A program made the position numbers and the translations under genes. The notes beneath the pieces were generated by a model. It saw nothing but the letters and a program-made list of their open reading frames with translations, searched no databases and had not been told where the DNA came from. 64,000 bases of DNA from Dimorphilus gyrociliatus. Its lineage: Eukaryota; Animalia; Annelida. How positions within the stretch are numbered: the first letter of the stretch is position 1; each line of letters opens with the position of its first letter. The stretch is taken from contig CAJFCJ010000004.1 in the NCBI GenBank assembly GCA_904063045.1, positions 122,195 to 186,194 of the forward strand, in the 5' to 3' direction. Positions 14,091-20,000 of the stretch are shown here, in pieces.

Positions 14091-17000
14091 ATGAGAGGTT
14101 GGTACTTATAATTTTTTTATTTCATATAATTATATGTAAATTTCTTCTGAAACTCTCAATTTTTAAACATGTGACCTCTAAATTTATTATTGTACTACTG
14201 ACGAGATGTGACAGAAACATTCGCAAAAATTACTTAAAAAATAAAAATATATTCTATTATTTCTAAATAAACTAATCTGAAATAAATTTACAGATTGCTG
14301 TGGGTGTTGTCAACGTGTCAAACCGAGGTATAAGCGAAATGTTGATGCAGTTTATCCAGCTTATCCAGAAGTTAGTATAAAAAAATCTTTGTATAGTTCT
14401 AGGTTTATTTGTTTTTTAAATTATAGCTTGGTATTGGAAAATCTAGTCTTGATAAGTTGATGCATTATGCGATTCAACATCCTGAGAAGTTGGACCGTAT
14501 TGGAGAGTATATAGCCCTACGCGTCCAGAGAGATCTTAGTAGACAACGACATGAGTAATTTTTTTATTTGTGCAAAATACTGTTTTTTGAGAGGTTTTTA
14601 TTGGCTTTTTTTCTTCAAACAGACAGTTAATTGTAGCACTAGAGATTCTCAATGCATTGCTCGACGCATGCAACAGTCAATGCGTAAACATGTTTGTAAG
14701 CAGTTTACTGAGGATACTGGAAGACCTTCTTCAATGCCCCAATGAAGAAGTGATGCTGCGCGCCACCGACTTGGTATAGAAATATATACATAAATTTTAA
14801 GATTTCACTTGCTAATTGAAAAAATATGTCTATAGTTCATAGCCTTTTCGAGGAAAGAAGAAGAAGCTCCTTGCTACGATAGAAACTATCGATTTTTTGT
14901 TGAAAAATTTTCGCAGATGTGTCATTCAAACAATAATGATCAGGATAAAAGAAATCTGTAAATATATTTCTTTATTTTCTAAACCTTAGCTTAATAATGT
15001 TTAATGTAATATAACTTAATGTAATGTTTTAATTAAGTATTCAATCTTATTAATAGAATTAGAGTGTCCGGAATAAGAGGTCTCCAAGGAGTTGTTAGAA
15101 AGACAGTATCTGATAACTTGCAAATGAATATTTGGGATAAAGAATACATGGATAAAATAATTCCATCACTCCTTTTTAACATGCAGGATGAAGAGTAAGT
15201 GTTTAGGAATAAGTCAGTTGCTTTCTATTTTATAACGCATGAGTAATTATACAAATCAATTTAAAATAATAGGAGAGTAATATAATCTTTAATCTTTCAA
15301 TATAGTTTCTTATTTTCACATTGATATGTATTAAACCTTTCTTTATAATAGGATTTTAATATATGAGTATATTTAGAACAACACAGTTGATCGAATCTCT
15401 AGTCAGTCGAAGTGAATCTAATAACCCTGAAAATTGCGGGAATCCTCTAATCGTATCTGAATATGTTTTCCGTGACGTGATTTCACGCGCGGCATTCGGC
15501 AGTATACAAAGTGTAGTCACGCCTGTGGTTCGGTACGTTTCTACAAAAGTTTAATGATTTTATCTATTAGGCCTTCAGAAGACGGACAAGAGGCGGGAAA
15601 CGCTTGTATTGTAGCTGCCGACGTACTCAGGGAATTGGTTGGTCATACCGAAATGGAGACATGGACTAGGGCATTTGTTCGGCCCACTCTAATGTAGGTA
15701 TTAGGTATCGAAAATCAGATAGCACTGCTGGATGACCACAATTTGAGAATCTGATATAATTATTAAAAAAAAACTGGGTTTAAATTTTAAAAAAGATGTC
15801 ATCCAACAATGATAGACTTTCGATTCCTAATTCTAGATTAAGGATTGGTATTGGGTGGGGGAACTTATTTTCTTTTGACACGCTTAGCCTTTTCATCACT
15901 CTTTTTAACAATGATTTTCTGCCTCTTATCCGATTTGGCTTGCTGGATGAAATCGCATAACTTTTAATATCATTTTTTTTTATTAAATATTGAGTTATTA
16001 TACAGGCATATAGAAAAGCACAAATTATGGAAGGATTTTGGTATTACATGGTTTAGAATTATAATGTTTTCTGTTCAGGTATATATTTTTTATTTTTTCT
16101 GCGTTTAGAATTTGTCTAATTTACAAAATCGAACACCAAAAGCTAGTCTGAATACTTTCTTGTCGATTCTTTAGTTCTCTTTGAAGCTCTTCCTGTAATT
16201 ATAAATAATTATATTCAAAATAATACTGTCAATTTTAAAACTTTAAATAATTTATAATGAGGTAGCAATGAACAGATAGATATTCAATTGTATTTTTCAA
16301 GCTTGCTTTTCAGTAATTGAATTATTAAATGATTTATTTAATATTAAATAATAAAAGTTTCCTCTCTATATATCTTATAGATAAATAATTTATTTCTTAT
16401 TGAAATAGTAGTCTCTTAGCTACTCTAAATCGGATATCTAAGCTGTCAATTTAGAATGATCATACTTCTACTTCGTCCCCAATGTCACTATCTAATCGTT
16501 TTATTTGTTGAATAATTTTAATATTCGTAGAAGCTTTTCTTTCGCTATAGGAAGCATGAAGCAATTAATTTCAATTACACCTACTAAAGTATATGAAAGG
16601 TAGACAGATTACACCAGCTGTTTAGAACTCTTTTTGCGACGGTGCACGTTCTGACTATTTTTCTTATCAACACAAGCCATTGCAAACATGCGAAATTCAC
16701 TTTTTTCCAATTTCTATAAAATTGCAATGCAAAGTCTTAAAAAGAGAAATAATTATGGTATTTACTTGATCTCCTGAAAGGTCGAATTCATTGAAAAGAT
16801 CCCGAACAGCTTTAGCATCGAAATCAAACAATAGACCAAAATTCTCGAATTCTTTTACTGATAGATTACCTGAACCGTCAACGTCCATGAGCTCAAAAAC
16901 TGTATCGCAATGTCTATATATAAACTCTTTCTCCTCTCCATCCTATATAATAAATGTTCGTTTTATTTCTAACCTATGTGCTACTTAAGTAAGCCTACTT

Positions 17001-20000
17001 TTATAGATATAAGAATACCGATAAGTAAATAAAACTCGTCAAAATCCAATTCTCCTGATCCATCAACATCAAATGAATCAAAGATTTTATAAGCTTGATA
17101 GTTTTTAACATTTGTAACATTTTCCATAAAAGTATTAAACTGAATATCTTTTGGAGGTTATTTAGTTATACTCGTTTGTTTGCAAAGTTACATTAAAATT
17201 ACCATTTAAAGATTGCGTATGATGAATGTCTAATATATTGAAAAACTCTAACAAATATTTCAAATTTTTGGCCGTCAATAAATAGTTTTTGTTCAAGTGT
17301 AAAAACTGAATTAATTTACTTGAGACTTTCATTATATCTTATAAAATTGATTGCCATTTAAATTAAAATGATGATGGAATTAATATTTTATTTTTGTTTT
17401 TTTTTTCAGAACCAGTTTAGTTATATTGTTGTAGAAGAATTAGTTGGCTACTTGACTTCCGACAATGTAAAAAACTCTGATATACAGTTAAGGAGCTATG
17501 TAGTGGATGTACTTACAGAGACTGCAACGATTGTTGCTAAGAATGCTTCACCACATATTAATACAGTAATAAACGTTATATATATATTTGTTTAGATTTG
17601 TTAACTCTTATATTTTTTCAGATAACAAAGAAGATAGTTAATTGTCTAAAAGAATTTATGTTCATGCCGGTTAAACACGATGTTGATGAGAAACGTTTTC
17701 ACGAGTCTATAGTTAAAATGATTGGTAATTTGAAAATCTATTTTTTAGAAAACATAAATACTCTATATTAATTAAAATTTTCAGGTGAATTCGCTAGTTG
17801 TGCACCTGATTACCAGAAATCTGATATTCTAAATATTATAATGGAGCATGTTTGTAGTGCTGGACGAGTTGAAAGGACTGAAATGTTCGTGATTTCCACT
17901 GAATGTATATAAAAAATATTATATTTTGATCATGATTTTAGAGAGAAAACTAAAATAGTTCAATTTCAAAGTATGCTTTTGAAGTCTATTCTACGAATGA
18001 CATCTAACACAAGTAAAACAACGCATATAGAAGTTTGTATTCTATAATAATTAGAAGTATTGAGTACATAATTTTTTTAATTTGCTTTTACAGACAACAT
18101 TTACTAAGACATTTTGCAGTTTCGCCGTTAAATTAAGTAAATCAGGCGATGCTGATATTAGACAGACGATTCAGGAAATATTTCAATGTCTGCTAGATAG
18201 ACATAAAAATTTGAAAAAGATTAAGCAAATTAAAATAGCGTTGGATGTATCATCTCTGGATTTGGTTACTCCTCATCATATAATGAAGGAAGACACTTAT
18301 TTTATGAAAAGAGTTAGTTATCAATTTTTTTTAATTCCAATTTATTGAATAATTTAATGTTAACAAAAATATATATCAATAACAGGCAGATGGGGGTCAA
18401 ATGTTGTTGCAGATTATTAAAGATGGTTCTTTGCCAGCAAATAATACGGTTGATAATTTCGTTGCAATCTATAGAACACTCGTATTAATCTGTCTGGAAG
18501 TTCCAGTCGCTGATGTTTTTATTGATGTTTTCAAAGTTGGTTTAGAAATGCAGGATGTTGCCTTAAGTACACCATCAGCTACAATGTTCATGACACATAA
18601 ATGTGCAATACACGCCCTCATTGCCGCTCTATTTAATATATTGGCTCAAATTGCTGATATTGAAGAATTGGTTCAATATGTGCATGGTGTTATTAAGGAA
18701 AGAGAGAATTCTCTCATAGGACAATGCTACTTGCCCGACTTTGCTTTTAATCGTTTAAACAAGGCTAAAGAGTAAGTGTATTTGATGTATCATTAAATAT
18801 CTAAAAGTAGCTTAAACAAAAGTGAATTAAGTAGTTTCTTATTTAGTTAAAGGATATTTTTATAATAATTTCGTTTCTGTTGCAATACTTTTTCCTTTAC
18901 TTACTTTTCTTTCAAAAACAGTCAATTTTTAGATTATAAAATAAAGTACGTTAAGTTTTGTGTTTGCCCTGAGTTATTAGTAAATTTGTGTTTTCAACCT
19001 TAAATTTGAGATTTAAAAACTTAGAACTAAAGAAAAACAATTGAAAAATTAGTATTTGTTTTCTATTGAGCTTTCGGTTTTCTTGCTTTTTCTTGTACAG
19101 AATATAATTTTTGCAGGTGATTTTACAGTATTTTTTGTGCAAGATAATCATGAATATATTATAGTGTGTGAAGTCAATGTTAATGAAAAGAAAAAACTAT
19201 TAAATGCACGTCTAGAAAACAAGTGTTTTTTTTTTTTAGGTTTCAAGCATAAATCCCTGCTTTAATAGCATGTTTAATACTTTTAGAGAATGATTAATGA
19301 GATTAATTTTTTTTATTTATAAAGCTATCCAACGAGTGATACTTTTAACGAAGAATGGAAATTTAACAAGGGACGAATAAGCGAGATTTTAAAAGATTGC
19401 GATCAATACGACGAATCTCTTCTCTTCAAGCCCATAGAAGTACCAGATTCTGTAACTATGAATGGTTAGTAGTTAATTAATTAGAAATGATGATAAATTT
19501 GAAAATCTTTACAAAAGAGACTATTCATAGTTTATACGACATTTTTATCTAAATTAATTAACCTGAAATCTTAAAAGCAACTATTAATAACAAATTTGTT
19601 AGGGTAATAGTTGATTTTCATTATTTTCTATTAAGTTACTATTACTATACTATATAGTATATGATTGAAGTGCAGATTGTACTGTATATATCTCAATATA
19701 TATATAATAATATACTGTATATATAGTATATATATACAGTATAATGTATATGTATAAGGGTGTAAAAACATAAATTGTGAATTAGACGGCATAGATGTCT
19801 TGGATCGAACCAGTTTTATTGAAGACGCTGTTTTATGTGATGATGAGAGCCTACTGCAATCAGAGACTAATTTATCGGTGAGATTTTCAAAACGACAGCA
19901 GAAATGTATAGCCAATTCTGATCACTGCTGACTAGTCATAGCATTATAATTAATATATCTATTATTATGAAGCACTGTGGTATATAAATATGATATAATC

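What the first reader, a model, noticed from the sequence alone, without database searches (positions are those of the whole stretch)
15407..15693. EFR3 mutually exclusive exon pair separated by only 38 nt
Seen: exon A 15407-15532 (126 nt; RSESNNPENCGNPLIVSEYVFRDVISRAAFGSIQSVVTPVV) and exon B 15571-15693 (123 nt; PSEDGQEAGNACIVAADVLRELVGHTEMETWTRAFVRPTL). Both have AG/GT ends and phase 2-2, fitting between ...MQDE(E/D) and (R/M)HIEKH. They align (GNPLIVSEYVFRDVI vs GNACIVAADVLRELV), and both match the single EFR3 helix ENP..LAE.CFRELLGRA as recalled. The spacer 15533-15570 is 38 nt, while other introns measured here are 51 nt or longer. Established: a too-short intron enforces mutual exclusivity by steric hindrance. 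Inference: two EFR3 isoforms with a swapped, strongly diverged armadillo-like helix pair in the PI4KA-recruiting scaffold. I do not know of this being described for EFR3.
Basis: partly seen in the sequence, partly recalled or inferred. Interest (0 to 1): 0.8.

Follow-up and report, generated by a model that had tools for sequence, protein, structure and literature searches.

The report
Either/or exon pair in worm EFR3
The gene for EFR3, the protein that anchors a lipid kinase to the cell membrane, carries two diverged copies of one small exon only 38 bases apart; a related worm keeps both, so they are most likely used one at a time, a known kind of splicing switch not reported for this gene and not yet checked in RNA.

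Summary
Exon A (15407-15532) and exon B (15571-15693) are both open, AG/GT-bounded and in phase 2-2 between EFR3 exons ending at 15194 and starting at 16006. The spacer is 38 nt.

Both exons align to the same EFR3 segment: a loop, a helix, a loop and the start of the next helix. A syntenic relative (L001) keeps both exons.
- Neutral sites are saturated between the two species: pS is 0.69 in constitutive exons and introns are 28-54% identical.
- Exon A is 90% and exon B 87% identical in DNA.
- Exon B has pN/pS 0.21, so it codes under purifying selection.
- Both exons show half the usual synonymous divergence.
- The spacer is exactly 38 nt in both species and 35/38 identical, while all six other compared introns changed length.
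- Fifteen other introns measured here are at least 52 nt.

Capitella and Ridgeia EFR3 have one copy of this exon. A conserved intronic block can pair with both splice sites of exon B.

Mutual exclusivity is therefore inferred, at about 0.7.

This is a new member of a known kind: 3n-length homologous exons with a too-short spacer, as in C. elegans. The scan has noted similar pairs elsewhere in this genome, including a 37-nt-spaced pair and a second EFR3 pair.

The parts
15057..15194 (+). EFR3 constitutive exon before the pair (ends ...LLFNMQDE, phase 2)
   Evidence: It is 86% identical in DNA to L001, with 1 amino-acid change.
15349..15406 (+). Conserved intron sequence upstream of exon A, including its acceptor; the last 18 nt are identical in L001
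   Evidence: Window/L001 alignment. The rest of this intron is poorly conserved.
15407..15532 (+). Exon A, 126 nt, the canonical-looking version (…VSEYVFRDVISRAAFGSIQSVVTPVV)
   Evidence: It aligns to the EFR3 motif …AE.C.RDL..RA.FGNIKSV..PVL. It is 89.7% identical to L001, with pN 0.022 and pS 0.37.
15533..15570 (+). 38-nt spacer: exon A donor GTACGT, candidate branch site TTTAAT/ATGAT, pyrimidine tract and exon B acceptor
   Evidence: It is exactly 38 nt and 35/38 identical in L001, against 47% for the pooled upstream introns (Fisher p 3e-8).
15571..15693 (+). Exon B, 123 nt, the diverged version (…VAADVLRELVGHTEMETWTRAFVRPTL)
   Evidence: It occupies the same alignment columns as exon A. 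It is 87.0% identical to L001, with open frame and splice sites kept, pN 0.071, pS 0.34, ratio 0.21.
15556..15600 (+). 5' arm of the predicted outer helix: end of the spacer, exon B acceptor and first 30 nt of exon B
15683..15709 (+). 5' arm of the predicted inner helix: last 11 nt of exon B, its donor GTAGGT and 10 nt beyond
15729..15805 (+). Small hairpin: an 8-bp stem (TGGATGAC / GTCATCCA) conserved around a diverged, indel-rich loop
15815..15955 (+). Conserved non-coding intronic block (about 90% identical, with 1-nt indels). Its 5' part (15822-15860) pairs with the exon B donor region and its 3' part (15915-15954) with the exon B acceptor region.
   Evidence: No Rfam family matches.
16006..16078 (+). 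EFR3 constitutive exon after the pair (HIEKHKLWKDFGITWFRIIMFSVQ)

Best explanation
Exons A and B are an old tandem duplication of one EFR3 exon, used as alternatives. Each mRNA carries A or B between the exons ending at 15194 and starting at 16006.

This would give two EFR3 proteins that differ in about 41 residues of the N-terminal helical rod: an acidic, Ser-containing loop, one helix, the next loop and the start of the following helix. A is the canonical, slowly evolving version. B keeps the first helix but has a different inter-helix loop and evolves about four times faster.

Joining A to B is prevented because the spacer is only 38 nt. Any branch point for exon B inside it lies about 21-25 nt from exon A's donor, too close for a spliceosome to assemble on both (steric interference). 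Because both exons are multiples of 3, frame or NMD cannot police double inclusion, which fits the frozen spacer length.

A conserved block in the B-to-next-exon intron can base-pair with both splice sites of exon B. I infer that this hides or loops out B and brings A's donor near the downstream acceptor. That would make A the default and B a regulated choice.

Shown: the sequence architecture, homology to EFR3, selection on both exons, the fixed spacer, and the conserved complementary elements.
Inferred: actual use of both exons, exclusivity, and any role of the RNA structure.
For: - Architecture and phases.
- EFR3 identity.
- Both exons map to the same EFR3 columns, and homologues have one copy there.
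- A-B similarity beats shuffles (p about 2e-4).
- The relative L001 is syntenic. Exons A and B are 90% and 87% identical there, against 28-54% for the five upstream introns and 67% for the B-to-next-exon intron, which holds the conserved block.
- Exon B pN/pS is 0.21, binomial p about 9e-4 against neutrality. Constitutive pS is 0.69 against 0.35 for A plus B, Fisher p 1.8e-5.
- The spacer is 38 nt in both species and 35/38 identical, while the six other compared introns all changed length.
- Fifteen other introns are 52-1331 nt.
- Precedent: C. elegans ME clusters of 3n exons with intervening introns too short to excise, where the minimal intron is about 40 nt (PMC4165533); human clusters with donor-to-branch distance under 50 nt (PMC5740500).
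- RNA structure: duplexes of -37 and -35 kcal/mol fall at the same places in both species. MFE z-scores are -2.6 and -3.2, with 0 of 100 shuffles as stable and the same nested architecture. The consensus has 90 pairs, none broken, and 9 one-sided changes that all keep pairing. Paired intron columns are 97% identical against 56% for unpaired ones.
Against:
- No transcript-derived peptide with A or B was found among proteins of 35-128 aa.
- JGI contig scans were empty.
- 38 nt is only slightly under the roughly 40-nt limit reported for C. elegans, and the intron floor of this species rests on just 15 introns.
- Double inclusion or double skipping would stay in frame.
- For the RNA structure, there is no compensatory double change with only two species. 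The duplex energy is matched by 1 of 100 mononucleotide shuffles.
- RNAalifold prefers conserved columns, so the paired-versus-unpaired contrast is partly circular.
Confidence: 0.7

Rival explanations
1. Exon B is not used in mRNA. It is a relic copy, and its conservation reflects a non-coding role: RNA structure or splicing-regulatory sequence for exon A and the long intron.
For: B and its flanks are embedded in a predicted conserved RNA structure. Synonymous divergence in B is reduced, showing RNA-level constraint. Differences in B are only mildly skewed by codon position (6, 2, 8). No B-containing peptide was found.
Against: The 41-codon frame, the AG and the GT are intact and in phase in both species, although neutral sites are saturated. 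pN/pS of 0.21 is significantly below 1; an RNA-only constraint should not spare synonymous changes. B still aligns to the EFR3 helix motif.
Confidence: 0.12
2. Both exons are included together, always or often. The 38-nt spacer is spliced as an ultra-short intron, giving an EFR3 with a tandem repeat of this helix-loop-helix.
For: Both exons are multiples of 3, so A+B stays in frame. A helical solenoid could accept an extra helical hairpin (one search shows a regular helix array). Splicing in the presumed species is adapted to short introns (PMC7854359).
Against: The spacer is 14 nt shorter than the shortest of 15 introns measured. The donor-to-branch distance would be 25 nt or less. An ordinary intron would not be 92% identical and length-invariant when the neighbouring short introns are about 47% identical and all changed length. 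Halved synonymous divergence and conserved flanking introns are marks of alternative, not constitutive, exons. All other EFR3 proteins examined have one copy.
Confidence: 0.1
3. A and B are alternatives, but exclusivity and choice are set by trans-acting factors binding the conserved intron elements. Neither steric hindrance nor the predicted RNA helices play a part.
For: The centre of the conserved block (about 15862-15914) and the element upstream of A have no significant pairing partner, so they look like protein-binding sites. There is no covariation.
Against: This does not explain the exact conservation of spacer length. The conserved arms coincide with the complementary stretches at both exon B splice sites in both species.
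Confidence: 0.08

Closest known systems
C. elegans mutually exclusive exon clusters with too-short intervening introns (egl-15 5B/5A, let-2 9/10, bet-2, gly-5, gly-6; PMC4165533)
   Same: Homologous tandem exons whose lengths are multiples of 3. The intervening intron is below the species' workable intron size, so double inclusion is physically blocked rather than policed by frame or NMD.
   Different: A different gene and phylum. Those spacers include 14 nt (egl-15) and 30 nt (let-2), all under about 40 nt, and were validated by RT-PCR. Here the spacer is 38 nt, closer to the limit, and no RNA data were obtained.
Steric interference in vertebrate alpha-tropomyosin exons 2/3 (my own knowledge; the mechanism is summarised in PMC4165533 and PMC5740500)
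   Same: The branch point of the downstream exon lies too close to the donor of the upstream exon.
   Different: In tropomyosin the branch point is unusually distant from the acceptor within a longer intron. Here the whole intron is short.
RNA-structure control of mutually exclusive exons: docking/selector systems (PMC6071210) and exon sequestration as reported for chicken beta-tropomyosin exon 6B (my own knowledge)
   Same: Conserved intronic sequence is complementary to sequence at an alternative exon. The predicted helices cover splice sites and loop out an exon.
   Different: There is one nested structure around exon B rather than selectors competing for one docking site. No covariation or experiment supports it.
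EFR3 family (yeast Efr3, Drosophila stmA/rbo, human EFR3A/EFR3B)
   Same: N-terminal Cys cluster, EFR3_ARM domain and collinear homology over the gene. This is the plasma-membrane anchor of the PI4KA-TTC7-FAM126 complex.
   Different: Isoforms listed for oyster, sea star and leafhopper vary elsewhere, and the vertebrate isoforms described in the review differ at the N-terminal Cys cluster. None swaps this helix-loop-helix. Capitella and Ridgeia genes have a single copy of this exon.

Membership tests
EFR3 protein family | EFR3 armadillo-repeat domain (Pfam PF21052) | tested here: met
   Three consecutive exons hit profile positions 1-24, 25-74 and 76-97. One exon alone exceeds the cut-off at 36.6 bits.
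EFR3 protein family | Collinear similarity to full-length EFR3 proteins, including the N-terminal Cys cluster and RYKR motif | tested here: met
   tblastn with oyster, sea star, priapulid, sponge and other EFR3 proteins is collinear from 14296 to 19457. CCGCCQRVKPRYKR is read at 14294-14340.
EFR3 protein family | C-terminal three-helix region that binds TTC7/FAM126 | not tested
I kept search tools away from that stretch.
Mutually exclusive exons from tandem exon duplication | Adjacent exons of similar length and the same phase that are homologous to each other | tested here: met
   The exons are 126 and 123 nt, both phase 2-2. Similarity is weak but significant, and both occupy the same family columns.
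Mutually exclusive exons from tandem exon duplication | Both copies maintained as coding sequence | tested here: met
   Both are intact in L001. pN/pS is 0.06 for A and 0.21 for B against saturated neutral divergence.
Mutually exclusive exons from tandem exon duplication | Exactly one copy in each mature mRNA | not testable with these tools
Protein and contig searches found no transcript.
Steric-interference class of mutually exclusive exons | Intervening intron, or donor-to-branch distance, below what the spliceosome can use | tested here: inconclusive
   The spacer is 38 nt, against a minimum of 52 nt among 15 local introns. Candidate branch A residues lie 21-25 nt from the donor. The true lower limit in this species is not known.
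RNA-structure-regulated alternative exons | Conserved complementary elements with evolutionary support for pairing | tested here: inconclusive
   Complementarity and fold architecture are conserved, with no pair broken and 9 one-sided changes compatible with pairing, but no compensatory change with two species.

The most novel reading that the evidence does not exclude
The conserved intronic block forms a nested long-range RNA structure that buries both splice sites of exon B. The same structure draws exon A's donor to within about 80 nt (along the RNA) of the next acceptor, turning an atypically long 473-nt intron into a short-intron-like substrate in a genome whose splicing is tuned to introns of about 60 nt. 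Opening the structure would switch EFR3 to a B isoform with a different inter-helix loop. That loop lies next to a loop that carries a conserved phosphorylation cluster in vertebrate EFR3 (EFR3A residues 219-224). The switch would thereby retune plasma-membrane PI4KA scaffolding in particular cells, stages or sexes.
Probability: 0.25. Interest if true: 0.55.

Novelty: new member of a known kind. Interest (0 to 1): 0.38.

Why it matters
EFR3 is the conserved membrane anchor of the PI4KA complex. Its described isoforms differ at the ends of the protein, not within the helical rod. An either/or swap of one helix-loop-helix would mark that surface as functionally tunable and would offer two natural variants to compare.

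The pair is also a clean comparative example of the steric rule. The exons are multiples of 3, so frame cannot police them, and the spacer length is frozen between species. It comes with a testable RNA-structure hypothesis, in an annelid lineage where such switches have hardly been studied. On its own it is one more case of a known mechanism.

Tried and rejected
- BLASTP of A against B gave no alignment, so I replaced it with a shuffle-controlled global alignment.
- Exons A and B alone gave no Pfam hit and no PDB hit.
- Searches with the ORFs around exon B and exon A returned only the genomic ORFs of the L001 species, P0058 and P0059. All contigs carrying P0058 are identical unspliced genomic sequence.
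- The window's own 124-aa ORF is not on record.
- The EFR3 search with oyster P0003 listed only the best 120 of 2311 hits, so the window species' own protein was not visible.
- JGI metagenome scans with exon B and exon A cores found 0 matches.
- Rfam found nothing on 15150-16150 or 16050-17450, so the conserved block is not a described RNA family. Its 1-nt indels exclude coding.
- I looked for a second copy of the exon in the Capitella and Ridgeia EFR3 loci and found none. Oyster, sea star and leafhopper isoforms show no alternative at this site.
- Pairing of the block's centre with exon A, or of the upstream element with the spacer, gave only -12 to -17 kcal/mol, so I rejected it as not significant.
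- A dinucleotide-shuffle script timed out. The rerun finished only the window half of the mononucleotide-shuffle control.
- In one search I concatenated exons 17410-18771 inside a script only to check the reading frame. The joined sequence was not sent to any search or fold.

Full report
**1. Observation**

- The upstream exon ends GAT GAA GA|GTAAGT at 15194.
- Exon A is 15407-15532 (126 nt), preceded by AG and followed by GTACGT.
- Exon B is 15571-15693 (123 nt), preceded by AG and followed by GTAGGT.
- The next exon starts at 16006 (HIEKHKLW...).
- Both exons are phase 2-2 and open only in that frame, in this species and in a relative.
- The spacer 15533-15570 is 38 nt.

**2. The gene**

Three consecutive upstream exons match Pfam EFR3_ARM at profile positions 1-24, 25-74 and 76-97. 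A phmmer search of 1.84 billion representatives with the 130-aa exon 18383-18772 returned EFR3 proteins. The sources name them as EFR3 of oyster, sea star, priapulid, mites, soft coral and sponge. tblastn with these proteins is collinear from 14296 to about 19457. I derived these splice sites for the 5' part:
- exons 14294-14370, 14427-14554, 14623-14773, 14836-14957, 15057-15194, A, B and 16006-16078;
- introns of 56, 68, 62, 99, 212, [38] and 312 nt.

Further downstream the introns are 1331, 56, 60, 57, 61 and 73 nt. The neighbouring ribulose-phosphate epimerase gene has introns of 55, 52 and 64 nt. Of 15 other introns, the shortest is 52 nt.

**3. Are A and B copies of one exon?**

BLASTP sees nothing. 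A global alignment scores 31, against -9.6 +/- 7.9 for shuffles (p about 2e-4).

More tellingly, MAFFT places both on the same columns of 18 EFR3 homologues, between ...LLFNM... and HLD.H.LW.
- A keeps the family's second half (RAAFGSIQSVVTPVV against RA.FGNIKSV..PVL).
- B keeps the first helix (VLRELVG against C.RELLG) and the closing VRP.L, but has HTEMETW where the family has RA.FGNI.

An AlphaFold model of the Capitella N-terminal 420 residues (mean pLDDT 85.8) shows what the segment encodes. [quoted passage not shown] So "helix pair" is roughly right.

The known TTC7B/FAM126A-binding part of EFR3A is C-terminal (PDB 9bax; PMC11941745). The swapped segment is not that interface. The review notes a conserved phosphorylation cluster at EFR3A residues 219-224. 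By my reading of the alignment, this falls in the loop at the start of this exon's equivalent. That placement is an inference.

**4. Comparative evidence**

The 86%-identical fragment P0001 led to a 37.8-kb Logan contig of a related species (L001). Its neighbours are the same: epimerase, filamin-domain gene, EFR3 and two GPCRs. Aligning it to the window gives the following.

| Segment | Identity to L001 |
|---|---|
| Constitutive exons | 81.5-87.7% |
| Five introns upstream of exon A | 28-54% |
| Exon A | 89.7% |
| Exon B | 87.0% |
| 38-nt spacer | 35/38 (92%) |

The spacer is again exactly 38 nt, whereas all six other compared introns changed length (56/61, 68/69, 62/56, 99/58, 212/204, 312/342). 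The spacer's identity exceeds that of the pooled upstream introns with p = 3e-8.

Codon analysis:

| Exons | pS | pN | Amino-acid changes |
|---|---|---|---|
| Constitutive | 0.69 (saturated) | 0.017 | |
| A | 0.37 | 0.022 | 2 |
| B | 0.34 | 0.071 | 5 |

- B's ratio of 0.21 is below neutrality (binomial p about 9e-4), so B is coding sequence under purifying selection.
- B evolves faster than constitutive exons (p = 0.005).
- Both A and B have half the synonymous divergence of constitutive exons (p = 1.8e-5). That is the usual signature of alternative exons carrying splicing signals.

The EFR3 loci of Capitella (L005) and Ridgeia (L006) contain one copy of this exon. The listed isoforms of oyster, sea star and leafhopper vary elsewhere. 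The duplication is therefore specific to the lineage of this worm and its relative, and predates their split.

**5. Mechanism**

Retaining the spacer gives a stop (TAA) within 8 codons of the end of exon A. Including both exons, or neither, stays in frame, so reading frame and NMD cannot enforce exclusivity.

Candidate branch sites in the conserved 3' two-thirds of the spacer (TTTAAT, ATGAT) put the branch A 13-16 nt from the acceptor. That places it only 21-25 nt from exon A's donor.

In C. elegans, introns under about 40 nt between ME exons are never excised. Five of the ten clusters with 3n-length exons rely on this (PMC4165533). In humans, a donor-to-branch distance under 50 nt is the criterion (PMC5740500). 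The frozen 38-nt length fits selection against lengthening. This step is inference.

**6. RNA structure**

The intron after B holds a block of about 140 nt (15815-15955) that is about 90% identical to L001. It contains 1-nt indels, so it is non-coding, and it matches no Rfam family.

In both species its 3' part pairs with the end of the spacer, the exon B acceptor and the first 30 nt of B (-37.1 and -36.6 kcal/mol). Its 5' part pairs with the end of B, its donor and beyond (-34.9 and -29.1).

- Whole-region folds have the same nested architecture, with z-scores of -2.6 and -3.2 and no shuffle of 100 as stable.
- RNAalifold gives 90 pairs, none broken. Nine one-sided substitutions all keep pairing, and there is no double compensatory change.
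- An inner 8-bp stem is conserved around a loop full of indels.
- Predicted paired intron columns are 97% identical, against 56% for unpaired ones.

Caveats:
- Only two species are available.
- The duplex energy is matched by 1 of 100 mononucleotide shuffles.
- Alifold favours conserved columns.

I read this as a plausible device that hides B and bridges A's donor to the next acceptor, making A the default. I put it at about 0.4-0.5.

**7. What is missing**

I have no RNA evidence.
- The look-up of sequencing runs listed two metatranscriptomes holding small shares of the gene's words, and one probable DNA run.
Those places were sent to no search tool afterwards.
- No transcript-derived peptides or contigs were found.

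**8. Species and scan context**

Other agents' notes call this genome Dimorphilus gyrociliatus. I did not verify that. The intron sizes here fit the median of 66 bp published for that worm (PMC7854359).

The scan has flagged many duplicated-exon pairs in this genome, including a 37-nt-spaced pair and a second EFR3 pair. These are unchecked leads and I do not count them as support.

**9. Verdict**

This is a real, selectively maintained tandem exon pair in EFR3. It is most likely mutually exclusive by steric interference (about 0.7), with a candidate RNA-structure switch. It is a new member of a known kind. I found no report of it for EFR3.

Noticed in passing
window 16079-17409 (minus-strand ORFs 16697-16888 and 17162-17332): The one long EFR3 intron (1331 nt) holds minus-strand ORFs. 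The first has EF-hand hits just under the Pfam cut-offs (DVDGSGNLSVKEF). This is probably a small EF-hand gene nested antisense in the intron, and L001 has matching minus-strand ORF calls.
   Followed up: partly
window 15862-15914: The centre of the conserved intronic block (TTATTTTCTTTTGACACGCTTAGCC...TTTTTAAC) is about 90% conserved but has no significant pairing partner. It may be a protein-binding splicing element. Unexplained.
   Followed up: partly
   Followed up: no
L005 106-1261 and L001 1-65: A DnaJ gene lies 0.7 kb from EFR3 in Capitella and about 5.7 kb upstream of it in the window's relative, with the epimerase and filamin-domain genes in between. This may be old annelid synteny.
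   Followed up: no
window 14294: The first coding exon seen begins right after an acceptor (acag|ATTGCTGTGGG...) with the Cys cluster. The start codon must therefore lie in an upstream exon that I did not locate.
   Followed up: no
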